In this document: positions 9,470 through 50,925 of the stretch, in pieces
Position numbering within the stretch: the stretch's first letter is position 1
Layout: every line of letters begins with the position of its first letter
Assembly (NCBI RefSeq): GCF_001194135.2
Contig: NC_068989.1
Span: forward strand, 56,869,735-56,933,734
DNA: 64,000 nucleotides
DNA from: Octopus bimaculoides
Taxonomy: Eukaryota
Reading direction: 5' to 3'
Made by a program: the position numbers and the translations under genes
The notes under the pieces: model-generated
The model's input: only the letters and a program-made list of their open reading frames with translations
The model's database searches: none
Told to the model about the DNA's origin: nothing

Positions 9470-9680
9470 TTGATTTCAGATTTTGGTACAAGGACAGCAA
9501 TTTCGGAGGAGGGAGTAAGTCGATTACATCGACCCCAGTACTCAGCTGCTACTTATTTTATCGACCCTGAAAGGATAAAAGCAAAGTCAACCTCGGCGGA
9601 ATTTAAACTCAGAGCGTGAAGACGGACGAAATACCACAAAGCATTTCTCCCGGCGCGCTAACAATTCTTTCACCTCGTCA
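9470..9680 (-). mobile_element. Family A SINE
   Basis: Reverse complement of the family A body and ccctcc tail. Confidence 0.85.
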
Positions 9681-9934: not shown

Positions 9935-10572
9935 AGGCACAAGGCCCGAAATTTTTGGGGAGGGGGCCAGTCGATTAGATCGACCCCAAGTACCGGTACT
10001 TAATTTATCGACCCCGAAAGGATGAAAGGCAAAATCGACTTCGGCGGAATTTGAACTCAGAACGTAACGGCAGACGAAATACCGCTAAACATTTCGCCCG
10101 GCGTACTAACGTTTCTTATTTCTTTACTGTCCACAAGGGGCTACACATAGAGGGGACAAACAAGGACAGACAAACGGATTAAATCGATTATATCGACCCC
10201 AGTGCGTAACTGCTACTTATTTAATCGACCCGGAAAGGATGAAAGGCAAAGCCGACCTTGGCAGAATTTGAACTCAGAACGTAGCGGCAGACGAAATACC
10301 GCTAAGCATTTCGCCCGGCGTACTAACATTTCTTATTTCTTTACTGTCCACAAGGGGCTACACATAGAGGGGACAAACAAGGACAGACAAACGGATTAAA
10401 TCGATTATATCGACCCCAGTGCGTAACTGCTACTTATTTAATCGACCCCGAAAGGATGAAAGGCAAAGCCGACCTTGGCGGAATTTGAACTCAGAACGTA
10501 GCGGCAGACGAAATACCGCTAAGCATTTCGCCCGGCGTACTAAGGTTTCTGCCAGCTCACTGCCTTACTTAA
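9935..10572 (-). mobile_element. Head-to-tail trimer of family A SINE with 217 bp period
   Basis: Near-identical ORFs at 10202 and 10419 (offset 217). Two units carry the tail ...gtctgtccttgtttgtcccctctatgtgtagccccttgtggacagtaaagaaat (minus-strand sense). Confidence 0.9.
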
Positions 10573-11719
10573 CTAAAAATGAATGCAATGCCAATGTTAT
10601 GCGACTGTCACATATTAGGCGTTTTACTGAGTCAAGAATGGAAAGAAGTGCCAGAGGCTGCCTATGTCTGCTTGCAGCTTCATAGGTGTCCATAACAATT
10701 AGCGAAAACATGATACATATTACCAAGTCATAACTACTTGCGAAAGACGGCTAATGTTTTTTATTGTTTTACAATTGTGGCAAGTTGAAGTGGATGGTAG
10801 AATTAGTTGAGCACTTTACCCGATGTTCTCATTTTGTCTTCTACCACACCTTGTCCGTTGCAAAATTAATTATATAATATAGTGAAATCTACTTTGCGAT
10901 GATAGAATGAGTAGGGTACCGGACAAAATGTTGGTGGATAGTAGAATTAGTAAAAAAGCTAACCTCATAAAATAGTAAGAAATTTGAAACTTGCAGTCAC
11001 CAGTTGGTCATTGTGCTGCCTTTCATGGAGTCGATAGCGTTGCAAGCAGTCAGGCCAAATCGCTGAATACAAGTCAGACTTAAATATTTAAGGGCATTGT
11101 GTATGTTTCTTTAAGTTCTATATATATCAAATTCTGAAGGCTTTGACTTTGCTTCTCCACCCCGCTGACAGCAGAAGAGCCGGTTAAATATTGGGATTCA
11201 TATAATGAGCCACGGCGCCCCAAAGCAAGGATTTGTATGTTGTTAGAAATTATTATTAGGACGTTGATAACATTTATTTGTCATGCTTTCATTTGCTTTA
11301 ATCGATTACTCCGTTTCTCATAAGATGTTTGGTCTTGTGCCAAACTTAGAAATAATTATTTTTACTCCCAGGAGTGGTACGGACAGAATTAGTAGTCTAC
11401 TACGTGCTAACTAGACACTCCTATTTTATATTGTAGCCTCGAATCCCGATGAAATCGATAAACTCAACCACCAAATCATTAATTCTGTTTTGTTGCTGTT
11501 TGACCTCAGAATCTACCCTGAATTAACAACGTTCCAAGTTCAAACCATGACAACTTTGTCTTATTTTCAGACCTCATATATATAGGGCAACATTACACAC
11601 TATGCATTTCTTGTTTGGTAGGGTAGGCTGTAATTTGAGGAAAATATGATTGCTCTTTCTAGCAGCTCGACCGGTCAAAGCTGACGAGTGGAAAAATGGG
11701 ACAAATGTGTCGGACTATA

Positions 11720-12290
11720 TTGTACATTGTTTTCTTCATTAAGGCAGAATCGTTTAGTGCGTCGGACAAAATACTTAGCGACGTTTCTTCCGGTTGATTA
11801 CGTTCTAAGTTGGAATCTCATTGAGGTTAACATTGCCTTTCATCCTCTTGGGGTTGACGAGATAAAGTACAAATGCTGGGATAGATGTGATCGACTTGAC
11901 CCCTCCCTCTAAAATTGCCAGCCATGTATCAACATTAGAAAGAATTATTATTTTTATGGAGTCTCGGACAAAAGTACCTTGCGATATTTTTCCGACTTTT
12001 TATGTTCTGAGATCAAATCACGCTTAAATCAACATTGCTTTCATCTTTACTGGGTCGATAAAGTACCATTTAAATACTGGTGTCTCCCCACTAAATTGCT
12101 GGCCTTGCGCCATAATTGAAAGTAATTATTTACTTTAATCCTTCAATTTAAATCCCACCGTAGGTTCACTTTGGCCTTCCATTTTCAGAGGATGGATAAA
12201 ATCAGTAGTAGTATTAGAATAGAATCGATACTTATCGACTGTAGCCGTCCCCAACAAATTTGCAGTTCTATGCCAGATTTTGAAGACATA
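11720..12290 (+). mobile_element. Cluster of about three degenerate family A SINEs
   Basis: Repeated gtcggacaaaa..gttct.ag..caaat..gcctttcatc..gataaagtac..ctggccttg blocks. Confidence 0.7.
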
Positions 12291-13622: not shown

Positions 13623-14017
13623 GATAGCCGAAAGGTGTTTGCCCATTGTACATGTATAATTCTATTTCATGTTACGTTCGTCCGATAGTCGTGAGGTCCT
13701 TTCTGTTGTTTACTTATTTGTTTTCGTATATGTACATTCGTTTGTCTTGTCCAGTGGCTCAATGCTTTTAACTTGAGTCCATGGCCCAGCCGGTTTCTAG
13801 TAGTATCGGAAATAAATGGCCGAAACTACCTGGACATTCCGGATTTCGACGAGGCAATTGGCTGCGAATGATCTGTGTATCTTGGTTTGTTCTGTTTGTC
13901 GTTGTTGTGCTTTTGTCGTTTTCCTGCATGTTGTTTTGACGGTTTCCGTTTGTTGTGTTTTTTCTCTTCTACCTTTGATTTATCCATGCAACGCTACGTA
14001 CAACTTGTTGTTTGCTT

Positions 14018-14053
<36 letters not shown>

Positions 14054-14383
14054 NNNNNNNNNNNNNNNNNNNNNNNNNNNNNNNNNNNNNNNNNNNNNNN
14101 NNNNNNNNNNNNNNNNNNNNNNNNNNNNNNNNNNNNNNNNNNNNNNNNNNNNNNNNNNNNNNNNNNNNNNNNNNNNNNNNNNNNNNNNNNNNNNNNNNNN
14201 NNNNNNNNNNNNNNNNNNNNNNNNNNNNNNNNNNNNNNNNNNNNNNNNNNNNNNNNNNNNNNNNNNNNNNNNNNNNNNNNNNNNNNNNNNNNNNNNNNNN
14301 NNNNNNNNNNNNNNNNNNNNNNNNNNNNNNNNNNNNNNNNNNNNNNNNNNNNNNNNNNNNNNNNNNNNNNNNNNNNNNNNNNT

Positions 14384-14409
<26 letters not shown>

Positions 14410-14417
<8 letters not shown>

Positions 14418-14625
14418 ATATGTTTGTGTGTCTGTGTTTGTCCCCCTCCATCATCGCTTGACAACCGATGCTGGTGTGTTTACGTCCCCGTTACTTAGCG
14501 GTTCGGCAAAAGAGACCGATAGAATAAGTACTAGCCTTACAAAGAATAAATCCTGGGGTCGATTTGCTCGACTAAAGGCGGTGCTCCACAGTCAAAGGAC
14601 TGAAACAAGTAAAAAAGTAAAAGAA
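14410..14625 (-). mobile_element. SINE-like repeat (family C)
   Basis: cgcttgacaaccgatgctggtgtgtttacgtccccgttacttagcggttcggcaaaagagaccgatagaataagtactag..gcggtgctcca also occurs at 49975-50180, 52715-52930 and 55830-55975. Confidence 0.8.
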
Positions 14626-15477: not shown

Positions 15478-15665
15478 GGAGGCGAGCCGGGAGAATCGTT
15501 AGCACGCCGGACAAAATGTTTAGCAGGATTTCATCTGTCAGTACGTTCTGAGTTCAAAATCCGCCGAGGACGACTTTGCCTTTCATCCCTTTCAGGGTCG
15601 ATAAAATAAGTACCATTTGAGCACTGGGGTCGAATCTTGAGCTAAAATTTGGAACCAATATTGGA
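15478..15665 (+). mobile_element. Family A SINE
   Basis: ggcgagccgggagaatcgttagcacgccgg..gttctgagttcaaaatccgccgagg..gtcgataaaataagtacc. Confidence 0.85.
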
Positions 15666-21334: not shown

Positions 21335-21900
21335 TGATGAGCTGACAGAATCATTAGCATGCTGGGCAAGATGTTTAGCGGCGTTTCGTTCGCCCTAACG
21401 CCGTGGTCGACTTTGCCTTTCATCCTTTCGGAGTCGACAAAATAAGTACCAGTTGAGTACTGGAGTCGCTATAATCGACTTGCTCTCTCTCCTGGAATTG
21501 CTGGCCTTGTGCTAACTTGTGCTAAAATTTGAAACCATTATTATCATATAAAAGACGTTGAAACTGACGGAGTCGTTAGCGGCATTTCAGCCATCTTAAC
21601 GTTCTGAGTTCAAATTTCACCGAGGGTAACTTTGCCTTTCGTGGTCAATAGAATAAGTATCAGTCACGATGTAACCGACTATTCTTCTCCCTCCAAAATT
21701 TCAGCTCTTGTACCTATTGTAAAAAGGGTCACTGAAGGCAGTGATCTGGCAAAATCGCTGTTGTGCTGGGAGTCATACTTAGCGGCAATTCTTCCGGCAC
21801 TTTATGTTCTGAGTTCAAATCCTGCCGAGGCCAACTTTGGTTTCCATCGTTTCAGGTTGGATAGTTATAAATCCGGTTCGTACTCTATCGACTGCTAAAT
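21335..21900 (+). mobile_element. Three adjacent family A SINE copies
   Basis: Three successive head/body motifs at ~21340, ~21560 and ~21740. Confidence 0.8.
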
Positions 21901-23959: not shown

Positions 23960-24028
23960 ATATGTATGAGACAGCGAGCTGGCAGAAACGTGAGCACGCC
24001 GGGCGAAATGCTTAGCGGTATAACGGCT
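23960..24028 (+). mobile_element. Family A SINE head, interrupted by the ORF1-only element
   Basis: agcgagctggcagaaacgtgagcacgccgggcgaaatgcttagcggta; the SINE sequence resumes as cggtatttcggct at 25550-25562. Confidence 0.85.
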
Positions 24029-25549
24029 CTGTGAATTATTGTGAATTATTGTGAATACTGTTGTGTTACTTTGTGAAAACTGTCTCGGTAAATAATTGTG
24101 ATTCTTGTGGAATTATTACGGTTACGTTTCACGCGAGCCGCTGCAATTTTTCCCAGCTATGGCAAGTGGTAGTGTCTCCAGTATGGAGAGCTACGCCAAG
24201 GCCACTGCGGTGAGGAAGCCAGTGCCGCTGGAAACCAAAATTCTGAGGACAGTTGTGTATCGTACACAGGCTGTAGAAACCTGTAAAATTGAAATGGTGA
24301 CGGAAGAGGAAATCGAGGAGTGCCTGGGTGAAATTGTGAATGAAGCCACGTACATCAACAGAGGAAGAAAGTTCGGTACGGTAGAGGTGAGGTTCGCCAC
24401 TATAGAAGAGGCAACCAAGCATGCGACCAACATTTTAAGAAGTGAAAACATAGCATTGCTACCAAGTTATAGAGGAAAAAGAAGTGTGAAAATACGTATT
24501 CCCAGAGTTACACCAGATATTAAACCAGAGTGGTTGGTTGCAACAGTGCTGGCTGCAACCAAGGAGGAGCCGGAATTGGAACCAGTGGCGAAATCAAAAG
24601 TGCGCAAATGGTGGGGATTTGGACACGAAATGTGGCTTTTTGCCACATTCGAGGACATAGAAATAATTCCCTACCAGATAGAAGTGGAGGATGAGAGAAC
24701 GTTAAATGCTGTAGTCGAGAGAAGGAAACCAAATTGCTACATATGCGGGGAAAGAGGTCATATGAAGACCAAATTCCCCCTATATGAGTTCACACAGCCA
24801 CAGCAAGAGAAAGCACAAGCAGAGGAGGAAAACATTGCAGACCACACTGAGGAAATGAAATAGAGACAGAAGTGTGAAACAGAGAAAACAAAGGAGAACG
24901 AAAATGGAGCTACTAACCCTAAAAAGCGAAAGAAAAATAAGTCAAAGGAACGGTCAACAGAAAACAAAAAAGAGATAGAAAAGCCAGAAACTAATAATGT
25001 ACAAAAAGAGGAGGAAAGAACGGATAAAGATGTGAAATACAAGGGGGTTTTGATAAAGTACGAGAATTGCGAGCAGATGGAGAGAAAAGTCGAGAGGTTG
25101 GAGGAAATAATAAGAGTGAAGATGCCAGAGAAATGTGCTGAGAAATGCATTTTGATACATGAGGAAAACTACTGTGAGTACATAAAAGAACTTGGTGAAA
25201 ATATAATAACGAAACGGGTATGGTTGGTGGAGACACCACCCCTAGAACTGATTATTTGCAGTTGATAGGGACGGAAGTAACAATGGTTAATGGGAGAAAG
25301 GTAATGCGAGTGTTTGAATTTTTTGAGTTACAAAACCGTTAAAATGTTTACATGACGTTGAACGTAAAAGTGAAAAACTGGATAAATGTAACCACCCGAC
25401 TTCGGGGATCGAGTGGACATTGCGCCTCATTTTTTTCATTCTTTTATTTTAATTACCCCGATTTTATGTTTGTTGCGTTTTGTACTGTATTTATGTTTTG
25501 TGATGTCTTAAAAATTCTTTGTATAGCCCTTGATGGGTAATAAAGAAAT
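24029..25549 (+). mobile_element. ORF1-only ('half-LINE') non-autonomous retroelement, copy 1
   Basis: Bounded by cggtataacggct (24016-24028) and cggtatttcggct (25550-25562), 11/13 identical. GT-rich 5' UTR, a single ORF, 3' end ...tagcccttgatgggtAATAAAGAAAT. No RT or endonuclease. Confidence 0.75.
24159..25265 (+). pseudogene. LINE ORF1/Gag-like nucleic-acid-binding protein, ~368 codons with one in-frame TAG (24861-24863)
   Basis: Track ORFs 24105-24863 and 25032-25265 are in the same frame and the DNA between them is open after the single stop. Motifs: YINRGRKFGTVEVRF (RRM-like), CYICGERGHMKTKF (knuckle, last Cys to Phe), K/E-rich linker. Confidence 0.8.
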
Positions 25550-25562
25550 CGGTATTTCGGCT

Positions 25563-26545
25563 GTGTGAGTTTGGATTTATTGGTAATTATTATTGGTGTG
25601 CGTCTGTATAGTAAGTGCAAGTTTCTATTGACTGCTTTTGTGTTATTTCCTGTTATGATTATTGTTCCTGTGATAATTATTTGTGTGATAGTCTTCGTTC
25701 GAAAACTATCGTGTGTTTTCCCTTGTGGGGGAAACATTAATTGCTGGCAAGATGCTGAAAAGTGTAACTTCGTCCGGCGAAGAGTCGCCAACTGACAGGG
25801 CGGCAAAAAAGAGTGAAAGTTTAATATTTGGCGATATTTCGGATTCTTCTGAAAGTGAATTTCCCCAACCATCAATGTGTAATAATGACGTGTAAAGCCT
25901 TCAAACAGAAGAAAATAAACAAAAAAAAAGTTTTGCGTCGGCGGCTGGAGATGGAACCCGCCAGCTGTCGATAAACAAAAATGACCTGATAAAGAACAAA
26001 GATATGATAACAATTGAAGACGGTGTTGTGAAAGTTCAAGCCCCGGAAGAACTATTAATGTTAGAAAAAAGAAAAACAATTATTTTAAAATCTTACTGTC
26101 TAAAAGGAAAAAAATTGATCGAGTGAGTGAAGAGAAAGTTGAGAAGTGCTTGAAACCCATCTGGCAGGATGGGTTCCCTAGCTAGAGGGAAGAAGTTTGA
26201 TACTATCGAAGTACGACTTGAAGATATAGTAACTGCACAAATGCACTCCGTTAAATCTTTAGAAACGGAGGACGTTGTTTTAATTCCAATATATATGAGA
26301 ATGAAGACGCCAAAGATACGTATACCAAGGGTACCACCTCAAGTCGACCCTATGAAGTTGATGGCGGCAGTCCTGGCAAAAAAGGAAGATAATATAACAC
26401 TCCCTCACGCTACCGTCACAGAAAAGGTTTATTGGACTAGTCAAACGGTTCACCTTCTAATACAAACAGAACAGTCAATCTTAGAACAATTACCGGAGAA
26501 AATAGAAATTGGGGAGGAATTCCTTAACGTATTCGTCACGTGCCC
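25563..26545 (+). mobile_element. ORF1-only element, copy 2 (diverged, disrupted, 3' end lost)
   Basis: Frames 25713-25895, ~25896-26125 (KSFASAAGDG..VVKVQAPEEL..KTIILKSY) and 26169-26549 (ARGKKFDTIEVRL..KIRIPRVPP) align to copies 1 and 3. It is cut just before the zinc knuckle. Confidence 0.7.
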
Positions 26546-26878
26546 CTGAGCAAATATGGTGTACTCAGCTGTGCTCCATAGTAATGTCTGCGATGGCGTT
26601 GCTACAGAGAGGGACAGTCGCTGCAGCAGTCACTCCACCTCGCGGTGATCATTTCTGTGACGGGCGGCTGTTATCCCTGTTTTGTGAAGGAAATCGGTAG
26701 AACGGGGTCCGAGAACACCAGGCGTCACGACGGCGACCAGAACAAACAGATATTGGCCGGTAAGGCCCCTGTGTTTATTGATTTTTCTCTCCTCTGCGTT
26801 ACGGGCGGTGACAACCGGATTTGCAGCCGATGGAGCTCGGTTGGAGCAAATTTAAACAGCATCTTCTTCCAAAGATGC
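26545..26878 (-). mobile_element. CRE-like RLE non-LTR retrotransposon C-terminal fragment (not in the ORF track)
   Basis: Manual minus-strand translation: PVVTARNAEERKINKHRGLTGQYLFVLVAVVTPGVLGPRSTDFLHK..DHREVE*LLQRLSLSV. This resembles the AE..K..KY..F.p.avET.G..G..QRLS C-terminus of CRE-type RLE proteins. Confidence 0.7.
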
Positions 26879-30145: not shown

Positions 30146-32530
30146 TTTCTCCTTTTAATTATTTTATTTAACAATCAATTTCTTTTATTCACCCTACCTC
30201 TTCCATTAAAAAAAAATTATATACTCGATATATTTTCTTCTTAGGCTCTGCTTTTAGGAACTCAGTGTTCTTCCTTTTTCTTGTACATGTGGTTTCGACT
30301 TCTTGTAACGGTATTGAAATCTGAAAAGTGTCATATAGCTAATCTATCGGTATTCCTACTCTTGTTGGTTCCTTTTCTATGACTCTTTCCTTAAGCTGAT
30401 TTCTATATCTCCTTTCCATTCCATTTCTGCTTCTTACACCATACATAATTCTTTTTGTGTGTTACAATTTCTCCTTCCCTGTATTGCTTACCATTTCTGT
30501 ACATTTTTCATATACCTTATCACCGATTCTAAAAAGATTTGGCATGTCTTTACTAACACGTAGTTTTTTCTTCACTGGTAACGGTTTTATCGAATACAGA
30601 CTTCATCTTTCTGGCAAGCATTAATTCTGCTGGTGAACTTCCTTCTGGTGCATTTGGGTTTGGAGTAACTCTGTATACCCTTAAGAATTGTTGGATCGTG
30701 ACCTCGACAGTGGCTTCCTTATTAGCTTTCTTTAAAGCTCTCTTAAAAGTGTCCATGAACCATTTAGCTCTTTACATTCGATCTAGGGTGATACAGTGCT
30801 ATAGCTTTATGTTCTACCGTGAAAATCTCACAGAATCTTTTAAACTCACAGGATACAAACTGTGTTCCGTTATCAGAGACAATTATATCCAGTACACCAA
30901 ATCTTTTGTGTAGCTGTTCATAACTATTAAGTAATAATATCCATTTACCGGGCCTGCAAAATCGATATGCAATTAGGACCATGGTATTTTCACTTCCGGT
31001 CAAGGTTCCCATTTTGTAGTAGGTAGTTTCGCTGCCAGCGCACATCCTCAGCAGCCTTTTACCAGTTTTCAACTACCTTGTCCATGCTTGGCCAGTATAT
31101 GAAACCTCGCATCAGCGCTTTCACTCTAGAGATGCCTGGGTGTCCCACATGGAACTCTTTTAGCATTCTCTTTTCTAATGTCTGTGGTATGACCACCCTC
31201 TGAGCGTCCATTAGTACACCGTCACATATAGAGTACACACTCACATCTTTGCATCAGACCTTCATTTATTTCCTTTTGTCGACTACAGTTTTCTTCTTGT
31301 CTCATTAATACGTCGGCAATAATGTCCTTGATGTATGAGCTATGGCCCGTCTGCCATCGTTATCCTTGTATAGGAGCACGGCTCCTATCTCATCCTCGCT
31401 AGCATCTATAGCTAGTATTATCTTTAACTTTGGGTCGAAATGCGTAAGACACAAGTCTGAAGTTAACACATCTTTTAACTCGTTAAATGCTTTCTGGCAT
31501 GTCTCTGTCCAAACCCATTAGGCATTTTTTTTTTAGTAATTCATTAAGTGGTGCCTTTACTTTATGTATATTTGGGATATACACTTGGTAATAATTTACC
31601 AAGCCTAGGAATGCTTGTAGCATTGTCCCGTTCGTCGGGAGTGGCATATTTCGTATTACCGTCGCCCTTGGTGGGTCCGGTCTGCGTCCACTTTCGCCGA
31701 TTACTTGACTTAGGTATTTTATTTTTGCCACAAAAAATTCACATTTTTCTTCTGTCAATTTTAGCCCGTATTCACTTATTCTCTCGAATACTTTCTTTAT
31801 GTGTTCAACGTGTTGCACTCGAGACTCGCTACTTATCAAAGTGTCATCGAAGTATGCGATGGCAAAGTCACAATCCCTTAATATCGCATCCATTATTTGT
31901 TGGAATATGGTGGGTGCCACTTTTACTCCAAACGGCAATCGTTTGAACGTGTACAATCCACGGTGCATATTGATTGTTAGTAGATGTGTGCAATCTTCCT
32001 CTAAGTGAATTCGAAGGCACGCCTCTGAGAGGTCTAATTTCGAGAAAATTTTCCCTCCGTTTAGTTTAGCAAATACATTTTCTGGGCTTGGTAGTGGGTA
32101 ATTGTGTGTGAGTAAACAGTCGTTTAATCCGATTGAGAAGTCTGCGCACACTCTTAGCTTTTTTTTCTTTACGTAGACCACTGATGCAGCGCAGTGTACA
32201 TGGTCAATCTTTTCAATTCAGGTTTTCCAACCTTTCTAGTCTTTATTGACCTAGTCAACCGCCGCAAACGGCCCGTTCCGTTTGGGCCTGAAAATAGGTG
32301 TTGAATTTTCTTTGATAGCAATCTTTGCTTTTGTTTTTCTGCAACAATCTCAACCTTCGGAAAAAAATTTGGGGAAATTTTCTTTCATTTTTGTCTCAGT
32401 TCATCAACCTCATTCGATCGTTTGGCTGTTCCGTTTATGCTATTGCCCAAAACGCTTATGGGTGTATTCCATAAATTAAATTTCTCCATAAATTCGGTGC
32501 CAAATAAATTCATGGATTTTTTTCAACACA
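30146..32530 (-). mobile_element. Degraded Ty3/Gypsy pol (RT, RNase H remnant, integrase)
   Basis: RT: LRVCADFS..FSKLDLS..RLPFG..IAYFDD..KYL (31483-32181). Integrase: HVGHPGISRVK..YWPSMD (31059-31244), IVSDNGTQF (30764-31072), YRVTPN..SPAELM (30553-30756). Confidence 0.92.
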
Positions 32531-36829: not shown

Positions 36830-37035
36830 TGGTTTCAAATTTTGGCACAAGGCCAGCAATTTCGGGGGAAGGGGCTAAGTCGATTACATCGACCCCAATG
36901 TTCAACTGGTACTTATTTTATCGAACCCGAAAGGATGAAAGCTAAACTCGACAACAGCGGAATTTGAACTCAGAACCTACAGATAGACCACATGTCACTG
37001 AGCATGTTTCCCGGCGTGCTAAATGTTCTGCCAGC
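36830..37035 (-). mobile_element. Family A SINE
   Basis: Reverse complement of full head, body and tail. Confidence 0.88.
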
Positions 37036-37789
37036 TCGACGCCCTACAAGAGACATGGATGTGATCACAGGCTATGACATATAGAACCATGGGTTTCAAA
37101 AGGCTGATTTAGTATAGCTAACACTACCCGAACACATAGTCGTTAGCAGTGTCCAACGACGAGCTCATAGGATATAGGACATAGCACATTATAATACCAT
37201 CTACTGGGACTTCTTCCGAGGATCATGTTTGTTTCAACTCTCTTCTGACAATGTTATAAGAATGAATAATTAAAGCCGAATCTTCCCCACGAAGGCAATG
37301 ATTTTATAATCATTTCGTTCTGGCATATTCTTTAGTGGGTTTCAACTACAAAGCAGTAAAAGAATACATTAGTAGCTGATCTACCTCGTCAGTTGCAACG
37401 GATATACAATATGTGAGGTTTCCAAACAAGAATAGTATTATGGGATTGTATGTTGCTAAGTTGGCCAAACTGACAGTAAGCTGAATGTAAAGACGATAGG
37501 TACCTTCCGCTCTGATATATATTAAGAATGACTTATACGGCTCCATGCTGTTCTAGGCATCGATGATGGAAATTTGCAGATATTATATGTGCAAAGATTA
37601 AACACAGACAAATACGTGAATACATTTACATTTATAGACACATGATCACATGATAAACTGTGTTTAGCGTCTGTAAATGGATGTTCAAGATTTTTCCCTG
37701 TATCTATATCTGTGTGTGGGCATCATTCATTACAGACATATACATATAAACACATACACATGCATGCACAAGAAGACATGTACACACTC

Positions 37790-38894: not shown

Positions 38895-39112
38895 TTGAAG
38901 GCGGCGAACTGGCAGAGTCGTTAGCACGCCGGGCAAAATGCTTGGCGGCACTTCGTCTGTCATTACGTTCTGAGTTCAAATTTCACCGAAGTCGACTTAG
39001 CCTTTCATTCTTCGAGGTCGATAAAATAAGTACCAGTTGAGCACTGGAGTCGATGTAATCGACTTAACCCGTTTCCCGAACACGCTGGCCTTGTGCCAAA
39101 ATCTGAAATCAA
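38895..39112 (+). mobile_element. Family A SINE, full length
   Basis: aaggcggcgaactggcagagtcgttagcacgccgggc..ggccttgtgccaaaatctgaaatc. Confidence 0.9.
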
Positions 39113-42612: not shown

Positions 42613-43109
42613 TTAATTTGAGTATATCGATATGAAGTGTTGCGTCGAGTTTCATGCCTATAATTTAGAACCATTCTATAACAGAAACCTTGAAGGCAAT
42701 ATCTCAGAGTTATTCGGTTACCATATGATGAATCGCGTTTGCAAGTCTTGTGCAAGTTTATTTTGTTGTAATTACAAGTGAACTCGTATGGAATTGGCGA
42801 ATAGTTGCTAGAACTTAGCAGCGATTATTTATCATAACAGAACTTTGTGCATTACTCTAGCGTACTACAAAGAGAAAATATGTCTTATCTTTTCTGTGAT
42901 ATGAAATCTGAGATACAATATCAGTTCAATGGACGCTTGTTGTTCATGAGAGGATTAATTTTACTGAAAAGTATACTTGAAAGTGATAAGTGATACTCCG
43001 CTCACTAACAAACAAACAAACAAACAAAAATGCTTCTCATTAATACATTACAATATTTATTATTGCCACTATAGTTCTAAATTTAAAATCCCGCAATCAA
43101 CATTGTCAA

Positions 43110-43285
43110 AGCGAGTTCGTAGAAATCTGGGGGCTTGCTTCAGTAAAAATTAGACGATAAAAAGGCGCTCGAATTCCGCCAAGGTCAACTTTGCCTTTCA
43201 TCATTTCTGGGACGATAGAATAAGTACCAGTTGAGTATTGGGTCCATGGAATCGACTTACCCCTCCCCCGAAATTGTTGGCCTTG
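43110..43285 (+). mobile_element. Family A SINE (degenerate head)
   Basis: gaattccgccaaggtcaactttgcctttcatc..aataagtaccagttgag..ggccttg. Confidence 0.75.
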
Positions 43286-44453
43286 TATATATATTTGAAA
43301 TCAAAATATCAATTTGTACTTAATTAAATAGAAGTCTCTATCAACGGCATATCTGACAATCATGACTTCTCAAGTTCATCAATATGGTAGAGGAAGTGAG
43401 GGAGAGATAAAATTTCAGCAACAGATGTAAGTAAATGGACCTCCTTTGGTTTCGACGATGAGAATAGATTTCCTCCTTCAGCAGAATTACTTGCTCGATG
43501 AATTAGTAAGTAAGTGGCTAAGTATACGTGAACCTTCAACGTAATTTTCTAGCAAAGTGATTGTGATACACTATGTGACATGGCTAAATATTTTAGATTA
43601 TAGGCACAATCCATCCAACGGGCATCCTTACAGTTTCTGTCAACCCAATATTGTTCATAAGGCTTAGTTTGACCCGACGATAGCAAAAGTCACATCCTCA
43701 AGAGGCTAACAAATGGGATCGAAATCGAGATCTGGTGGTTGAGAAGCAAACTCCGTGATCATTCAATCATGCTACATTACAGCAACATATGTAATCATTA
43801 CATTAATGTATATGATATGCGTTATACACACACGCATAAGCACACACACACACACACACACGTGTGTGTGTGTGTTTGTGTATTAATAAATATATTCATA
43901 TGCATACGTATGCATTACGTATGTATGCATTAATATAATATAATCATTATATTAACTCTAGGTGATATATTTTTATTGTTCTACAGACGCACTCACGACT
44001 ACTACTTCTATATCACAAAATACCTAATTTCTAATCATGATTTATGGGAGAAATTTCAATTTAATTTCAATATATTTTCATCAAATAATAACATTTAAAA
44101 ATCGTTATAAATTCAGTGAAGTAAATCAAATGTTGCAACAAATTGTATGTAGAAGTAAGAATGTCAAGGAGGGAGAGAGAGAGAGAGGGAGGGAGAGAGA
44201 GACCCATATTTAATTATGAAGTCTAGCAAATTGGAATAAAACAATTTATAGTAAGTAGATATAGTCATCAATAAAAATACACATGCAACTATATGTACAC
44301 GTATAAGTATACATATATATATTGTACGCCAGAGGTATGCATAATCTGTAGCATTAATACACTTAATGTATGGTGTTCAGGCTAAAGTCAGGGTAATTTA
44401 CATTATCAATTTAAGATTTTGAAATTTTAATAATGAATAATACATTCTCACAT

Positions 44454-44511
<58 letters not shown>

Positions 44512-44770
44512 GTATGTATGTATGTATGTATCAACAGAGGTGTCATCTACGAACAGAATAGGATCGAAGGAGTACAAGAAAAAATGAGCTGCGCAAGTCC
44601 AGAGCCAACTTCTTGCCTTCATTTTCAGCACACCACCTGTACCCGATCTGCGGCAGAAACTTCCCAGCTATAGCCGTACACACCATAATCCATCTTCTCC
44701 CATGTGATGTCCTTTATATTTCTAATGTTTTATCTATCTATCTATATATACGTGTAGTGTAACGTAGTTA

Positions 44771-44925
44771 CTCGTCGCCAATTGTAGTATCGCTACTATT
44801 CATGACGATACTTGTTTACACTATAACCATAGAGTAACAATAAAATATATAAGGAAGCAGAGTAACAACAACGTAACAATCCAACAAACTCTCTACGAAC
44901 TATACACGAACCAACAAACGTGAAA
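44771..44925 (-). mobile_element. Partial Gypsy LTR plus PBS, duplicate of 45855-46010
   Basis: About 150 bp direct repeat of the LTR 3' portion, ending CTACA-AT-TGGCGACGAG on the minus strand. Confidence 0.75.
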
Positions 44926-44999
44926 TTTTTGATGTTTTTCTTAACGTAGGTTTCCCAAATCTTATCCACATGTCGGTATTAATAATAGAGATGTCGCTC

Positions 45000-45790
45000 C
45001 CAGTATCTAGCTGTTTTTTAATATTCACTTAATTTTACATGTACAAATTTCCTCTTTTTTGTGTCGCTTCTAATGTACGTTGAGAAAACTTCAGAATTTT
45101 TCATGTTCGACCTTCCTAACTTTGCTCTGCGATGTGAGCTCTTGTGTCCTACTTTTTGGCAACTGTAACATTTTTGCATTTTGAAACAACAATCCTTTCT
45201 GAAATGTAGGGCTCCATATTGGTAGCATGAGTTTGGTCTTAACATTTTTCTTTTGTTTATATCCCCTTGTACAAAAAAAAAGGAGGCACTTAAACGTATC
45301 GGGATTAGTTCCTTCAGTTTAAACCTTTACGGTCCCGGCATACGTGACAAAATCTTCCTTTCTTTTAACTAGATTTCAACACTCCCATCGAGTGTTAAAT
45401 AGGTAATATTTTTGATAGTAGTTCGACTGTTTTCTGGAAACAAATTTCACTATTTTTTTGGTAGTATGAAATAATATTTTTCATGTTCAGCCGGCGCTAA
45501 TTTATGTAATAATAGTCTTACCTTTTCGTTGTCCGTCCACGACTTGCAATATTCCATGAAGAATTCTTCGTACCTTGTTAAAGTACGCTGCAAACGTTAT
45601 ACCCTCTTCTAGGTCATAAGTGAATTCTGTTATAGAGTTCGATACGCCATCTGGCGAAAACGAAATTACAGTGTTTCTTAAGACATAGTTCCATTAATTG
45701 TTGTTGTTTTTCTTGTTGCTGAAGTCGTTTCTGCAACTCCTGCTGCTGTTCTTGCAACAGTTTTGCAACTGTATTATAGAAGCTAATAGG
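45000..45790 (-). mobile_element. Degraded Ty3/Gypsy gag
   Basis: VSNSITEFTYDLEEGITFAAYF..SWTDNEKVRLLL..PAEHE.., then two knuckles CYQYGALHFRKDC (degenerate) and CYSCQKVGHKSSH (45018-45245). Confidence 0.8.
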
Positions 45791-46061
45791 TCTTCCATCA
45801 TTAACAGCTTTGTATCACAAAAATTTGTTAACTGACCTGCGTGAGTTTCAAATGCTCATCGCCAATTATTGTAGTATCTCCACTATTCATGACGATACTT
45901 GTTTACACCAATACCATATAGTAACAATAAAATATATAACGAAGCAGAGTAACAACAACGTAATAATCCAACAAACACTTCACAAACTATACACGAACCA
46001 ACATACAATATTCCGACAAACTGCCAAAACGACACCCCACGACTTCCTGCGATCGACTCTA

Positions 46062-47734
46062 ATTTCTTTATTTGGCACATGCGACCACAACACAGAGGAG
46101 GACACTACAAGGATAGACGCAACAATACAGCACGTGGGGTACAAAGAAAGAATGATGAATGAAATGAATTACTTGCAATGAGGTGATGAAATGGCATACG
46201 AGTCCCCCAAAACTCGCAGTTTCATTTTACAGTTCTCTCATACAGTTAATGATCGTTTTTTCCCTTTAACAATTGTAAGTGGCCACAGCTCCTCTGCCGT
46301 TACTACACTTGGCAGGATGTCGTAGCCCACGTATAATCAACTTATTTGAAACTTGTCCGGGTGTATCTGTTGCAGTCTATGCATCACATGCTCTTCTACC
46401 AATATGGCTTTCTTTTTTTCTTCAAACGTTTCAGGGTCCAGTTTAAGTCTTACTAATCCTTTTATTCTTGCAATCATCTTTTCCAACTCTAAATCCTTGT
46501 CGTAAAAATTCACTGTTCTGATATTTTTATAATCAACTCTTCCAATTACCTTTCCTTCCATCCTTGCTCTTGTCTGCTCGTCTATTATCTTGTTCGACCA
46601 TTTCCTCCGCTTTTCCTTTCTTTTCACTTTTTCGTGCTCTGTATCTTGGGTTCGATTCTCAACTTCGTCTTTTTCGGTTTCCATTTCCTTCTCTGTCTTT
46701 TTTTCCTCCTCTCTTTTTTGGGAGGTTCTTTGGCGGCGATTCAGTCCGCATACGCTTTCTATCTGTTTCTTGAGAAATTTTCTCGCACTCCACAGTTTCC
46801 ACCTGCTTTTTCTCAACCTCCTTTTGTACGCCTTCCACCATCTCTTCACAGACCTCTATTTCTTCCACTTGTACTTCTCTGCGGGGGCACACCGCCTGCA
46901 TGTGTCCCCTACTTTTACACTTATAACAGATTGGTGGTCTTCCCTCCACCACAACTCTCAGTCGTGCTCCGTCAGGGAGCTCTACCTCCTCTGCTATGTT
47001 GTGTAGATCTGGTAAGGTTATGTGTACGAGTGCATCTATACCAAATCCCCACCAGTTGATCTCTCTCGATTTTTCTACTTTTAAAACCTCCACTTCGTTG
47101 CAGTTATGAATAACGGCTGTAACCAGCCATTTCAGATCTATTTCGGGAGGTGCTCGTCCAATTCTCACACGTGCAGCTCTTCTTCCACAATAGGTAGGTA
47201 AAAGGGCCCACCTAGCCATTCTTAAGGGTACAGTGGAGTGCTTTTTCGCCTCTTCCTCACTCGTAAATCGCACCTCTACCGTACCGAACTTTCTACCACG
47301 TACGTAGAATGTTGTTAATTGCTTGACGTCGTTTAGGTACTGCTCCAATTCGTCCGTCTCAGCCACTTCTATTTTCTTTGTTTCAACGTTAAGCGTTCTG
47401 TATGTTATTATTTTTCTCTCGGCTCGCTCGAAAACTTCCTTCGGCGGTGTTAATTTTAAAACATCACCTTGCTTCTTGAATAATTTCTTGTATTTCTCTA
47501 ATTTTGTTTTATCCACGTGTATCTCTTGCATTTCCATTGCATTGGCAGACAAGTTTCTACTTGTTGCCGCAGCATACGTTGTTTCTTCCATACCCGATAT
47601 GGGTAGGAAAACAATTTTCAACAATAAATATTAACGATAATATTTACACAACAATTCTTAAAACAATTTCAACAGAACGCAAATCAGACAAACTCATCGC
47701 GTTGAACGCTTTCTTTAACCCAAAATCACAACAC
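46062..47734 (-). mobile_element. ORF1-only ('half-LINE') non-autonomous retroelement, copy 3, 1673 bp
   Basis: TSD cctgcgatcgactcta (46046-46061) and cttgcgatcaactcta (47735-47750), 14/16 identical. Single ORF; 3' end ...gtgccaAATAAAGAAAT. No RT or endonuclease. Confidence 0.82.
46337..47591 (-). pseudogene. LINE ORF1/Gag-like protein, ~418 aa with one frameshift near 46700
   Basis: MEETTYAAAT..FYVRGRKFGTVEVRF..RVRIGRAPP..VVVEGRPPICYKCKSRGHMQAVC (intact CCHC), continuing in ORF 46337-46849 (K/E linker plus C-terminal domain). Confidence 0.85.
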
Positions 47735-48712
47735 CTTGCGATCAACTCTACCTGTCTCTCACTCACATCGCAACTATTTATAGTCATTCGGTCGAATCTA
47801 TTGTCGCAGGAGGCGACGTGACGCTCGCCACAACAACATGTATATCTATCTATCTATCTACCGATACGTGCATACATATATGAAGGGAGAGAAAGAGATA
47901 GGTGTGTGTATTTGTATGTATGTACATATGTATATGTATGTGTGTGTATATATGTATGTATAAGTATATGTATATGTAGTTAGCGCCACCAAGCCAGTAG
48001 TACATGTCTTTCAACTCTGATGCATCTCCCACACAAACAAAGTTTACACCTATCAAACCTACAAATCATTAACTCGATCTCCTGCTTAGTTCCGTTCATG
48101 GTATGCAAGCAGTCTAGATTCAATATATAAATTGATAATTCTAACATCACGTCGATTCCATGCAATTCCAGTTTCCCTTGATACCATATAATGCTTCTAG
48201 CAAAGGACTATCGAATCTATATATATACACACATATGTGTATTTACTGGCCTTCTTTTTTAGAAATGAATAATATTATTTAAAGTACATCTTTGACTAGG
48301 AGGTATCTACACTCCTACAAAATATCTGGAAGAACTCAAGAAAAAAGAAACTAGTTTTATAAATCGTATGGCCTTAAAATCTCACTACTCCCTAATTGCA
48401 GTCATGCCCTATTGTCTCTTACCTCCCTAAGATGGCATGCTACTTAACATAAACATATTGATAAACTTGTTTGTATTCATATATATATATATATATATAT
48501 ACACATCAGTGTTGTGTGTGTGTGTGTTTGTACGTGTGAATGAATGCTTGTATATATGTTTTTAAGTATATACGAGCATTGCCACTACATTCAGTGTGGT
48601 TAATATATTGATGACGATATAAATTTAATGCTGTATCAGTTGCATATATCAAGTTATATATATGTGTGTGTATGTACTATATTCATATATGCATATGTAT
48701 ATTTATACCCCA

Positions 48713-50176: not shown

Positions 50177-50180
<4 letters not shown>
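49975..50180 (+). mobile_element. Family C SINE-like repeat
   Basis: gtttcagtcattagactgcggccatgctggagcacc..gccgaaccactaagttacggggacg. Confidence 0.8.
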
Positions 50181-50219
<39 letters not shown>

Positions 50220-50797
50220 NNNNNNNNNNNNNNNNNNNNNNNNNNNNNNNNNNNNNNNNNNNNNNNNNNNNNNNNNNNNNNNNNNNNNNNNNNNNNNNNN
50301 NNNNNNNNNNNNNNNNNNNNNNNNNNNNNNNNNNNNNNNNNNNNNNNNNNNNNNNNNNNNNNNNNNNNNNNNNNNNNNNNNNNNNNNNNNNNNNNNNNNN
50401 NNNNNNNNNNNNNNNNNNNNNNNNNNNNNNNNNNNNNNNNNNNNNNNNNNNNNNNNNNNNNNNNNNNNNNNNNNNNNNNNNNNNNNNNNNNNNNNNNNNN
50501 NNNNNNNNNNNNNNNNNNNNNNNNNNNNNNNNNNNNNNNNNNNNNNNNNNNNNNNNNNNNNNNNNNNNNNNNNNNNNNNNNNNNNNNNNNNNNNNNNNNN
50601 NNNNNNNNNNNNNNNNNNNNNNNNNNNNNNNNNNNNNNNNNNNNNNNNNNNNNNNNNNNNNNNNNNNNNNNNNNNNNNNNNNNNNNNNNNNNNNNNNNNN
50701 NNNNNNNNNNNNNNNNNNNNNNNNNNNNNNNNNNNNNNNNNNNNNNNNNNNNNNNNNNNNNNNNNNNNNNNNNNNNNNNNNNNNNNNNNNNNNNNNA

Positions 50798-50925
50798 TAT
50801 AAAGGGCTTCTTTTAGTTACCATCTACCAAATATGCTCACAAGGCTTTGGTCGGCCCGAAACTATAGTAGAAGACACTTGCCCCTCGTGCCACTCAGTGG
50901 GACTGAACCTGGAACCGCGTAGCTT
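50798..50925 (-). mobile_element. Family D tRNA-derived SINE
   Basis: Reverse complement of the copy at 52520-52690. Confidence 0.7.

What the first reader, a model, noticed from the sequence alone, without database searches (positions are those of the whole stretch)
46046..47750. Cleanly delimited retroelement encoding only an ORF1/Gag-like protein ('half-LINE')
Seen: a 1673 bp insert (46062-47734, minus strand) splits a Gypsy LTR and is bounded by a 16 bp TSD (14/16 identical). It holds a 5' UTR, one ~418 aa ORF (RRM-like block with RGRKFGTVEVRF, intact CX2CX4HX4C, K/E linker, C-terminal domain; one frameshift) and a 3' UTR ending AATAAAGAAAT. There is no RT, endonuclease, LTR or TIR inside the TSDs. 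Established: long TSDs indicate target-primed reverse transcription by an APE-type LINE; RRM plus CCHC is the L1/Tx1-type ORF1 architecture; mammalian HAL1 elements are non-autonomous L1 derivatives encoding only ORF1p. Inference: this is a cephalopod HAL1-like family that brings its own RNA chaperone and borrows ORF2p in trans. I know of no description of such a family in octopus but cannot search to confirm.
Basis: partly seen in the sequence, partly recalled or inferred. Interest (0 to 1): 0.88.

Follow-up and report, generated by a model that had tools for sequence, protein, structure and literature searches.

The report
Octopus ORF1-only "half-LINE" retroelement family
This is a decayed copy of a jumping gene that keeps only the RNA-binding gene of an octopus L1/Tx1-type LINE and has lost the copying enzyme, one member of a diverse family found in several octopus genomes that probably spreads by borrowing the enzyme from full-length relatives.

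Summary
Window 46062-47734 (minus strand) is a 1673-bp insert flanked by a 16-nt repeat (14/16) that occurs nowhere else in the window. It carries one ~418-aa ORF with a single frameshift, and no RT, endonuclease, LTR or TIR.

- The window holds a second bounded copy (24035-25549, 40-44% aa identity, TSD partly inside a SINE) that ends in the same AATAAAGAAAT.
- It also holds a fragment of a related, full-length-type ORF1 (about 25746-26549).
- Homologous ORF1s sit directly upstream of an APE-RT ORF2 in Octopus vulgaris, O. sinensis and Argonauta hians. That ORF2 is most similar to human L1 ORF2p.
- These full-length LINEs share the terminal ...GCCCTTGTGGC-AATAAAGAAAT module and a 16-nt TSD.
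- Further ORF1-only copies in O. vulgaris and O. bimaculoides have no ORF2 within 6-8 kb.
- The six ORF1-only copies included in the tree group together (bootstrap only about 50%).
- Synonymous sites between them are saturated; non-synonymous sites are not.
- The modelled protein is two tandem RRMs, a CCHC knuckle, a long helix and a C-terminal domain.

It is a HAL1/HeT-A-like analogue, not a member of HAL1. Trans-mobilisation is inferred. "Gypsy LTR" is unverified.

The parts
47735..47750 (-). 5' copy of the target-site duplication, TAGAGTTGATCGCAAG
   Evidence: matches 46046-46061 at 14/16 and occurs nowhere else in the window
46062..47734 (-). ORF1-only retroelement, copy 1 (1673 bp)
47592..47734 (-). 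5' UTR (143 nt, T/G-rich start GTGTTGTGATTTTGGG)
   Evidence: alignable with the 5' UTRs of the copies at L011 and L012
46659..47591 (-). ORF1, frame A (310 aa to a premature stop caused by the frameshift)
47190..47411 (-). RRM-like domain 1 (aa 61-134, contains RGRKFGTVEVRF)
   Evidence: AlphaFold model, pLDDT >90; Foldseek hits to tandem-RRM proteins
46947..47183 (-). RRM-like domain 2 (aa 137-215)
46887..46928 (-). CCHC zinc knuckle, CYKCKSRGHMQAVC
   Evidence: Pfam zf-CCHC E 0.005; the cysteines are conserved across the family
46698..46722 (-). Zone of the single 1-nt frameshift (two A-runs)
   Evidence: frames compared with P0001 and P0003
46337..46715 (-). ORF1, frame B: K/E-rich linker, long helix (46559-46678), C-terminal domain (46364-46528), stop at 46337-46339
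46062..46336 (-). 3' UTR. The last ~45 nt form the block shared with the full-length LINEs, ending in AATAAAGAAAT (46062-46072)
46046..46061 (-). 3' copy of the target-site duplication, TAGAGTCGATCGCAGG
24016..24034 (+). 5' TSD of copy 2 (CGGTATAACGGCTCTGTGA), continuous with a SINE fragment upstream
24035..25549 (+). ORF1-only retroelement, copy 2 (~1.5 kb). ORF 24159-25265 with one in-frame TAG at 24861. Same architecture as copy 1 and ends in AATAAAGAAAT
25550..25568 (+). 3' TSD of copy 2 (CGGTATTTCGGCTGTGTGA)
25746..26549 (+). Copy 3: degenerate 5' fragment of an ORF1 of the full-length-LINE type, lying head-to-tail after copy 2

Best explanation
Window 46062-47734 (minus strand) is a dead copy of a non-autonomous non-LTR retrotransposon that descends from an octopod L1/Tx1-type LINE. 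It keeps the LINE's 5' UTR, ORF1 and 3' terminal module, and it lacks ORF2.

Shown here:
- It is an insertion flanked by a 16-nt duplication.
- Its ORF1 is homologous to the ORF1 that sits directly upstream of an APE-RT ORF2 in full-length LINEs of Octopus and Argonauta.
- It shares their 3' terminus (...GCCCTTGTGGC-AATAAAGAAAT) and their TSD length.
- Several other ORF1-only copies exist in at least two Octopus species. They have the same layout and group together in an ORF1 tree.

Inferred:
- The element is transcribed and its ORF1p coats its own RNA. ORF1p is predicted to consist of two RRMs, a CCHC knuckle, a long helix and a C-terminal domain.
- ORF2p supplied in trans by autonomous relatives recognises the shared 3' end.
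- ORF2p nicks the target with a stagger of about 16 nt and copies the RNA by target-primed reverse transcription. Priming starts at the defined AATAAAGAAAT terminus, not on a poly(A) tail.
For: - Boundaries and TSD.
- Second bounded copy in the window with the same terminal 11-mer. That 11-mer occurs exactly twice in 64 kb, both times at element 3' ends (0.19 matches expected). Its TSD is unique in the window and partly SINE-derived.
- Third bounded copy in O. vulgaris (L005), with an 18-19-nt TSD and ending in AATAAAGAGAAAT.
- No ORF2 in the window or near L005, L007, L008, L009, L011 or L012.
- Full-length relatives with ORF1 plus an ORF2 of about 1130 aa: L004 (intact, three tandem 5.28-kb units), L002, L006, L003 and L001.
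- The ORF2 is closest to human L1 ORF2p (E 2e-71, against 1e-24 for R2).
- The L006 LINE has a perfect 16-nt TSD and ends in GGCGAATAAAGAAAT.
- Alignment of the 3' tails of ORF1-only and full-length elements.
- NJ tree: the six ORF1-only copies included fall on one side of a split and the five ORF2-linked ORF1s on the other.
- ORF1-only proteins all start within about 10 aa of the SYAAAT motif, whereas ORF2-linked ones carry N-terminal extensions of roughly 50-300 aa before the corresponding motif.
- Between ORF1-only copies pS is 0.74-0.84 (saturated) and pN is 0.28-0.46.
- Family size: 896 clusters at 50% identity with E<=1e-3, named ones from O. bimaculoides, O. sinensis, O. vulgaris and Argonauta hians.
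- Structure: pLDDT 80, with tandem-RRM Foldseek hits.
Against: - Bootstrap support for the ORF1-only clade is only 101/200. Some ORF1-only copies could therefore be independent deletions.
- Only about nine ORF1-only loci were examined. There is no genome-wide census of copy number, boundaries or TSDs.
- No empty site was recovered for copy 1.
- Copy 1's 16-mer is 10/16 identical to the first bases of the 5' end of a related element at L011. A terminal redundancy or target preference cannot be fully excluded for this copy.
- L012 has an N-gap just after its ORF.
- RNAalifold found no conserved 3' structure. 3' recognition therefore rests on sequence conservation only.
- There is no evidence of transcription, of recent insertions or of trans-mobilisation.
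- Both window copies are defective.
Confidence: 0.8

Rival explanations
1. Each ORF1-only copy is a one-off. On this view a full-length LINE RNA or cDNA lost ORF2 by internal deletion or template switching during a single retrotransposition event. There would be no self-propagating ORF1-only lineage.
For: Bootstrap for the ORF1-only clade is only about 50%. Some copies keep what look like the first codons of ORF2 after the conserved GTAAGT junction, as a deletion derivative would.
Against: At least eight independent ORF1-only loci share the same layout. The six included in the tree fall on one side of the NJ split, and all share a shortened N-terminus. They differ from one another by 50-70% at the protein level, with saturated synonymous sites but non-saturated non-synonymous sites. 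This implies long divergence under protein constraint. In a profile search built from ORF1-only members, 93 of 138 family representatives are closer to ORF1-only references than to ORF2-linked ones; that comparison is biased by the query.
Confidence: 0.1
2. The copies are host genes or retrogenes. On this view a domesticated ORF1-derived RNA-binding protein family was dispersed by retroposition of its mRNA.
For: Public annotations call them proteins ('CCHC-type domain-containing protein', 'uncharacterized protein LOC...'). An AATAAA signal lies near the 3' end. Protein-level constraint is seen between copies.
Against: There is no poly(A) tail. The 3' terminus is identical to that of the autonomous LINEs. 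Copies are inserted in a SINE and in an LTR-element remnant with TSDs. Both window copies carry disabling mutations. The one multi-exon model inspected spans LINE ORF2 sequence, and other long models are chimeras with WD40 or LDLa domains.
Confidence: 0.05
3. For copy 1 specifically, the 16-nt flanking repeat is not a TSD. It would instead be the element's own 5'-terminal sequence repeated after the 3' end. That could be the stump of a head-to-tail tandem partner or a read-through transcript from a tandem array.
For: Head-to-tail arrangements recur in this group: L004, L001, L003, L011, and window copy 2 followed by copy 3. Copy 1's 16-mer is 10/16 identical to the first bases of the L011 unit ii 5' end.
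Against: Copy 2's repeat is demonstrably SINE sequence. The full-length LINE at L006 has a perfect 16-nt TSD of unrelated sequence, so a TSD of about 16 nt is the family norm. A 10/16 match in one post hoc comparison is weak. This rival would not change the classification of the element.
Confidence: 0.1

Closest known systems
HAL1 ('half-L1') of mammals
   Same: A non-autonomous derivative of an L1-superfamily LINE that encodes only ORF1p. It arose by loss of ORF2, is dispersed with TSDs, and is presumed to use ORF2p in trans (PMC5753468, citing Smit 1999 and Bao & Jurka 2010).
   Different: HAL1 ORF1p is the mammalian Type II protein (coiled coil, one RRM, CTD; Pfam Transposase_22). The octopus protein has no Transposase_22 match and is modelled as two RRMs, a CCHC knuckle, a helix and a CTD. 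The octopus elements end at a defined AATAAAGAAAT with no poly(A) tail. They occur in a different phylum and have an independent origin.
HeT-A telomeric retrotransposon of Drosophila
   Same: A non-LTR element that has a Gag/ORF1 coding region but no pol coding region. It must obtain RT from another source and is more abundant than its putative helper (PMC2173066).
   Different: HeT-A is a telomeric retrotransposon (from my own knowledge assigned, like TART, to the jockey clade). It transposes only to chromosome ends and serves a host function. The octopus elements are interspersed, flanked by TSDs and of L1/Tx1 type.
Octopod L1/Tx1-type autonomous LINEs: L004 (O. vulgaris OX597840), L002 (O. 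sinensis CM016872), L006 (Argonauta hians)
   Same: Homologous ORF1 (30-38% identity, same domain order), the same 3' terminal module, the same TSD length of about 16 nt, and the conserved GTAAGT after the ORF1 stop. L1-Tx1 LINEs are already reported as present and recently active in octopus (PMC8967140, PMC13282606).
   Different: They carry an APE-RT-zf ORF2 of about 1130 aa and an ORF1 with a longer N-terminal extension. They are about 5.3-5.4 kb long, against 1.5-1.9 kb.
Type I ORF1p (Khazina & Weichenrieder classes, as summarised in PMC5203782)
   Same: At least one RRM followed by a CCHC zinc knuckle. This type is reported for plant L1 and for non-mammalian L1/Tx1 elements.
   Different: Here there are two tandem RRM folds, a single knuckle, and an additional long helix plus a small C-terminal domain with a conserved FPxDVG-like motif in relatives. 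No Pfam RRM model matches the sequence.

Membership tests
ORF1-only non-autonomous LINE derivative (HAL1-like kind) | Encodes an ORF1 homologous to that of an autonomous LINE | tested here: met
   tblastn and profile hits to ORF1s that lie directly upstream of ORF2 at L002, L003, L004 and L006
ORF1-only non-autonomous LINE derivative (HAL1-like kind) | No ORF2 (APE/RT) within the element boundaries | tested here: met
   Pfam. There is no tblastn hit of the L004 or L003 ORF2 anywhere in the window. The element is 1673 bp, of which about 1.25 kb is ORF1.
ORF1-only non-autonomous LINE derivative (HAL1-like kind) | Shares the 3' end of the autonomous partner | tested here: met
   The terminal block ...TGTCCCCTCT..GCCCTTGTGGC.AATAAAGAAAT aligns between ORF1-only copies and full-length LINEs. 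The L006 LINE ends in the identical AATAAAGAAAT.
ORF1-only non-autonomous LINE derivative (HAL1-like kind) | Multiple copies with the same boundaries and different TSDs | tested here: met
   Three bounded copies have unrelated TSDs of 16, 19 and 18-19 nt. Further ORF1-only loci are L007, L008, L009, L011 and L012. No genome-wide census was possible.
ORF1-only non-autonomous LINE derivative (HAL1-like kind) | Mobilised by ORF2p supplied in trans | not testable with these tools
   Needs a retrotransposition assay or evidence from polymorphic insertions.
Mammalian HAL1 proper | ORF1p of the mammalian L1 Type II kind (Pfam Transposase_22) and a poly(A) tail | tested here: not met
   No Transposase_22 match. 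The fold is tandem RRM plus CCHC. There is no A-tail at 46062. It is an analogue, not a member.
L1 superfamily (L1/Tx1 group) for the parental LINE | ORF2 with an N-terminal APE endonuclease, RT and a C-terminal zinc-binding region, closest to L1 ORF2p | tested here: met
   Pfam Exo_endo_phos, RVT_1 and zf-RVT. phmmer against the PDB gives human L1 ORF2p at E 2e-71, against R2 at 1e-24.
L1 superfamily (L1/Tx1 group) for the parental LINE | Type I ORF1p (RRM plus CCHC) | tested here: met
Tx1 clade specifically | RT phylogeny places the element within Tx1 | not tested
   No reference RT set was available. Hit names were uninformative. The literature labels octopus elements of this class 'L1-Tx1' (PMC8967140, PMC13282606).
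Tx1 clade specifically | Sequence-specific target sites | tested here: inconclusive
   TSDs differ: TAGAGTYGATCGCARG, CGGTATTTCGGCTG.., GCTGGGTTCGGCTA.., TCTTCAACTTATGTTT, and (ATT)n. Two of them share TTCGGCT, and head-to-tail arrays are frequent.
Processed pseudogene / retrogene | Poly(A) tail and an intron-containing parent gene | tested here: not met
   There is no A-tail. No parent gene was found. The one multi-exon model inspected spans LINE ORF2 sequence, and other long models are fusions with unrelated domains.
Gypsy LTR (identity of the host sequence) | A pair of LTRs flanking gag-pol with a Gypsy-type RT/IN order | tested here: inconclusive
   Only a decayed gag (weak DUF7083, CCHC) and a DTGS protease motif lie downstream. 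The only repeat of the flank (45855-46006 against 44771-44919) includes the gag start and is not an LTR.

The most novel reading that the evidence does not exclude
The ORF1-only elements are not just debris. They would be an old, monophyletic lineage that parasitises the autonomous LINE and has persisted and diversified across octopods. The lineage would be under selection for its own N-terminally shortened, tandem-RRM ORF1p. It may have become more diverse than the autonomous L1/Tx1 LINEs whose ORF2p it uses. That would make it a natural system for asking what ORF1p contributes to cis-preference and to capturing ORF2p, or whether such proteins also restrain the parent LINE.
Probability: 0.3. 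Interest if true: 0.7.

Novelty: new member of a known kind. Interest (0 to 1): 0.5.

Why it matters
ORF1-only LINE derivatives are known from mammals (HAL1) and, in a special telomeric form, from Drosophila (HeT-A). An independent and diverse example in cephalopods has a different ORF1p architecture and a defined, non-poly(A) 3' terminus. It would show that keeping the chaperone while losing the enzyme is a recurrent evolutionary strategy, not a mammalian oddity.

It also matters for annotation. Many octopus 'CCHC-type domain-containing' or 'uncharacterized' proteins in UniProt and RefSeq are ORFs of these elements, and some gene models are chimeras with them.

Octopus LINE activity is currently discussed in relation to brain function. 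A protein-coding non-autonomous partner family should be counted in those analyses.

Tried and rejected
- The repeat finder on the whole window was swamped by microsatellites and N-runs. I used BLAST self-comparison instead.
- Word-indexed protein searches returned only 4-6 hits because K/E-rich words dominated. The exhaustive HMMER search found the family.
- AlphaFold with a 6-sequence alignment was useless (pLDDT 46). With 119 sequences it reached pLDDT 80.
- BLASTN cannot detect the UTR homology between subfamilies. Only the terminal ~45 nt and parts of the 5' UTR align.
- RNAalifold found no consensus structure in the 3' tails. By eye, a possible 3-bp GCC/GGC stem lies before AATAAA and shows some compensatory changes, but it is too small to claim.
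- dN/dS could not be estimated properly because dS is saturated for every pair with DNA available. Closer paralogues (P0012, 90% identical to copy 1; P0007, near copy 2) exist only as proteins.
- I considered origin by splicing from the conserved GTAAGT after ORF1 and rejected it, because the ORF1-only copies retain that motif.
- I considered a strictly sequence-specific target and did not support it, because the TSDs are unrelated.
- No empty site for copy 1 could be found, because the host LTR-like element has no intact second copy in the window or the fetched loci.
- Names of ORF2 homologues gave no clade label.
- The Bao & Jurka HAL1 paper is not held in the library.
Full report
**1. The observation**

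Read on the minus strand, the region contains a 1673-bp insert at 46062-47734. It is bounded by TAGAGTTGATCGCAAG (47750-47735) and TAGAGTCGATCGCAGG (46061-46046), which match at 14/16. With up to three mismatches this 16-mer is found only at these two positions in the whole window on both strands. Chance expectation is 0.13 matches, and no shuffle out of 100 gave two.

The insert has a 143-nt 5' UTR. The ORF starts at 47591 and runs in one frame to a stop at 46659. After a 1-nt shift in or near the A-runs at 46698-46722 it continues in a second frame to the stop at 46337-46339. The repaired product is 418 aa. It contains RGRKFGTVEVRF, one CX2CX4HX4C knuckle (46887-46928; Pfam zf-CCHC E 0.005), a K/E-rich linker and a C-terminal block.

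The 275-nt 3' UTR ends in AATAAAGAAAT with no A-tail. There is no Pfam RT or endonuclease domain and no tblastn match to a related ORF2. There are no terminal direct or inverted repeats.

**2. The host sequence**

Downstream of the insert (minus orientation) lies a decayed gag-like reading frame starting about 155 nt away. It has a weak DUF7083 match (E 1e-4, below threshold), a CCHC knuckle and, further on, an LDTGSD protease motif. The insert therefore sits in the 5' region of an LTR-type retroelement remnant.

I could not show a pair of LTRs. The only repeat of the flank (45855-46006 against 44771-44919, 89% identity) includes the gag start codon, so it is not an LTR. Gypsy identity rests on nothing I could test. 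A separate RT/integrase remnant lies at 30764-32181.

**3. More copies in the same window**

tblastn with the repaired protein found two further relatives on the plus strand.

Copy 2 spans 24035-25549.
- It has a 125-nt 5' UTR and an ORF at 24159-25265, interrupted only by one in-frame TAG at 24861.
- It has the same domain order as copy 1, including RGRKFGTVEVRF, a knuckle with the last Cys mutated, a K/E linker and a C-terminal block.
- Its 3' UTR ends in exactly the same AATAAAGAAAT.
- That 11-mer occurs twice in the 64 kb, both times at these 3' ends (0.19 expected).
- It is flanked by CGGTATAACGGCTCTGTGA and CGGTATTTCGGCTGTGTGA (16/19). This pair is again unique in the window.
- The upstream flank, and the first ~14 nt of the repeat, belong to the abundant octopus SINE (90% identity over 53 nt to other copies in the window). 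The repeat is therefore target sequence, a true TSD.

Copies 1 and 2 are only 40-44% identical in protein.

Copy 3 (about 25746-26549) is a degenerate 5' fragment. Its best matches are ORF1s of the full-length type.

**4. The family and its autonomous relatives**

An exhaustive profile search found 896 clusters at 50% identity with E<=1e-3. Named members come from O. bimaculoides, O. sinensis, O. vulgaris and Argonauta hians. The rest come from marine metagenomes and unlabelled read assemblies. None of the longer hits contains RT or APE. The long ones are chimeric gene models with WD40 or LDLa domains.

Genomic context is decisive. At the following loci the homologous ORF1 is followed within 6-50 nt by an ORF2:
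- L004 (O. vulgaris), with three tandem units of 5.28 kb and an intact 1132-aa ORF2;
- L002 (O. sinensis);
- L006 (Argonauta);
- L003 (marine metagenome);
- L001.

That ORF2 has an N-terminal APE, an RT and a C-terminal zf-RVT. It is far closer to human L1 ORF2p (E 2e-71) than to R2 (1e-24). The literature already lists L1-Tx1 LINEs as present and recently active in octopus (PMC8967140, PMC13282606).

By contrast, no ORF2 match lies within 6-8 kb of the ORF1 at L005, L007 and L008 (O. vulgaris) or at L011 and L012 (O. bimaculoides). None is present on the 1.9-kb L009 contig or anywhere in the window.

**5. Shared ends and shared TSD length**

The Argonauta full-length LINE (L006, 7806-13242) ends in ...GCCCTTGTGGCGAATAAAGAAAT and has a perfect 16-nt TSD, TCTTCAACTTATGTTT.

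The 3' ends of the other elements are as follows:

| Element | Type | 3' terminus |
|---|---|---|
| L002 | full-length LINE | GCCCTTGTGGCCAATAAAAAGAAT |
| L004 | full-length LINE | CCCCTTGTGGGTAAATAAAATAAAAC |
| L005 | ORF1-only | GGCCTTGTGCCTATAATAAAGAGAAAT |
| L008 | ORF1-only | ...CTATAATAAAGAGAAA |
| L011, unit i | ORF1-only | ...GTGCCTAATAAAGAAAA |
| Window copy 2 | ORF1-only | GCCCTTGATGGGTAATAAAGAAAT |
| Window copy 1 | ORF1-only | GTCGCATGTGCCAAATAAAGAAAT |

The last ~45 nt align across both kinds of element. L005 is bounded by an 18-19-nt TSD (GCTGGGTTCGTCTAGCTCT and GCTGGGTTCGGCTACTCT).

ORF1-only elements thus carry the same terminal module and the same target stagger as the autonomous LINEs. 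This is what one expects if the same ORF2p integrates them. No conserved RNA structure was detected in the tails.

**6. A lineage or one-off deletions?**

In an NJ tree of the 181-column core, six ORF1-only copies fall on one side of a split: window copies 1 and 2 and the copies at L005, L007, L008 and L009. All five ORF2-linked ORF1s fall on the other side. Bootstrap support is only 101/200.

The ORF1-only proteins also share a short N-terminus that begins within about 10 aa of the SYAAAT motif. ORF2-linked ones have extensions of roughly 50-300 aa before the corresponding motif.

Between ORF1-only copies, synonymous differences are saturated (pS 0.74-0.84). Non-synonymous differences are not (pN 0.28-0.46). 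The proteins therefore diverged under constraint.

Taken together I favour a self-propagating ORF1-only lineage with several subfamilies. Monophyly is not firmly established.

**7. The protein**

With a 119-sequence alignment AlphaFold gives mean pLDDT 80. The model has:
- a short N-terminal helix and hairpin;
- two beta-alpha-beta-beta-alpha-beta domains at aa 61-134 and 137-215;
- the knuckle at aa 222-235;
- a disordered K/E region;
- a 40-residue helix at aa 306-345;
- a small C-terminal domain at aa 356-410.

Foldseek against the PDB returns tandem-RRM proteins (IMP3 RRM12 at E 6e-5, Sxl, HuC, hnRNP A1 UP1), each covering about 170 columns. This fits the Type I ORF1p definition (at least one RRM plus CCHC; PMC5203782). 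It does not fit the mammalian Type II protein, and there is no Transposase_22 match.

**8. Mechanism**

Shown: the insertion, its TSD, the ORF1 homology, the shared 3' module, and the absence of ORF2.

Inferred: the element's RNA is bound in cis by its own ORF1p. ORF2p from a co-resident L1/Tx1-type LINE recognises the shared 3' end, nicks the target with a stagger of about 16 nt, and primes reverse transcription at the defined terminus. That terminus lies only 5 nt after an AATAAA signal and carries no A-tail. This suggests internal, sequence-directed initiation rather than poly(A) priming.

**9. Comparison with known systems, and novelty**

The closest kinds are mammalian HAL1, a non-autonomous L1 derivative encoding only ORF1p that arose several times (PMC5753468), and Drosophila HeT-A, which has Gag but no pol coding region (PMC2173066). 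The octopus family works like these but is a member of neither. Its ORF1p type, 3' end and phylum differ from HAL1. Its clade and interspersed, TSD-flanked distribution differ from HeT-A.

I found no mention of an ORF1-only LINE derivative in the octopus TE papers I could search. I rate it a new member of a known kind, of moderate interest.

**10. Caveats**

- Only about nine ORF1-only loci were inspected.
- Copy 1 has no empty-site control.
- Copy 1's 16-mer is 10/16 identical to the start of a related element's 5' end at L011, where that element directly follows another element's 3' end. Head-to-tail arrangements are frequent in this group. A terminal-redundancy reading of copy 1's repeat is unlikely but not excluded.
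- Expression and current activity are untested.

Noticed in passing
window 24016-26549: ORF1-only copy 2 lies head-to-tail immediately upstream of copy 3, a 5' fragment of a full-length-type LINE ORF1. Only copy 2's 19-nt TSD separates them. The bases after the TSD (TGTGAGTTTGGATTTATTGG) resemble the 5' starts of other elements.
   Followed up: partly
L004 2722-17026; L001 1-460; L003 3-1886; L011 4447-6402: Head-to-tail tandem arrangement recurs in this LINE group. L004 has three 5.28-kb full-length units. At L001 and L003 the tail of an upstream unit lies directly before ORF1. At L011 an ORF1-only unit's 3' end (AATAAAGAAAAC) abuts the next unit's 5' UTR. The cause is unknown. Candidates are re-insertion at duplicated target sites, template jumping or unequal exchange.
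   Followed up: partly
L004 ~9333-9340; L001 ~1849-1857; L003 ~4472-4482; L002 ~11803-11853; L006 ~9585-9622; also L005 9151, L007 7168, L008 7353, L009 1198, window 25272: A splice-donor-like GT(A/G)AGT sits immediately after the ORF1 stop in all full-length LINEs and is retained in ORF1-only copies. At L002 and L006 it is followed by a polypyrimidine tract, and at L002 by an AG, just before the ORF2 ATG. This looks like a mini-intron between ORF1 and ORF2.
   Followed up: no
window 25550-25568 and L005 9653-9670: The TSDs of copy 2 and of the L005 element share the 7-mer TTCGGCT (TTCGTCT in the SINE consensus and in the L005 upstream copy). The L011 junction also contains CGGC. This may be a weak target preference or a shared SINE-like target. 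The full-length LINE at L006 has an unrelated TSD.
   Followed up: partly
window 42900-45900 (minus strand) and 30764-32181 (minus strand): There are two LTR-retroelement remnants. One has a decayed gag, a CCHC knuckle and a DTGS protease next to copy 1, with an internal duplication of its 5' UTR and gag start (45855-46006 against 44771-44919). The other has an RVT_1 reverse transcriptase and an rve integrase fragment.
   Followed up: partly
window 4848-4990, 9631-9677, 10079-10116, 10296-10333, 10420-10585, 15482-15620, 21339-21381, 36998-37038, 38904-39040, 23969-24034: Many copies or fragments of one SINE family are present (…GCTGGCAGAAxCGTTAGCACGCCGGGCGAAATGCTTAGCGGTATTTCGTCTGCCGCTACGTTCTGAGTTCAAATTCC…). 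One of them is the target of copy 2.
   Followed up: partly
L008 5186-5411 vs 7772-7998, and 5700-5860 vs 7340-7470; L007 5360-5480 vs 5690-5810 vs 7708-7779: In O. vulgaris, ORF1-only elements sit inside local inverted or direct duplications that include part of their own 3' UTR and flank (96% identity at L008). These are either post-insertion rearrangements or assembly artefacts.
   Followed up: no
P0010 (XP_036364761.1), P0011 (CAI9742213.1, 'EPM2A-interacting 1-like'), P0040, P0082, the UniProt A0A0L8* entries: Public gene models annotate these TE ORF1s as host proteins. At least one model runs across LINE ORF2 treated as an intron. Others are fused to WD40 or LDL-receptor class A domains.
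   Followed up: partly
window 47850-47990, 13900-14450, 50180-50820 and elsewhere: Dense microsatellites (TATG/CA/TA runs) and 3386 N bases in several gaps. One microsatellite (gata/tatg) directly adjoins the host element upstream of copy 1.
   Followed up: no
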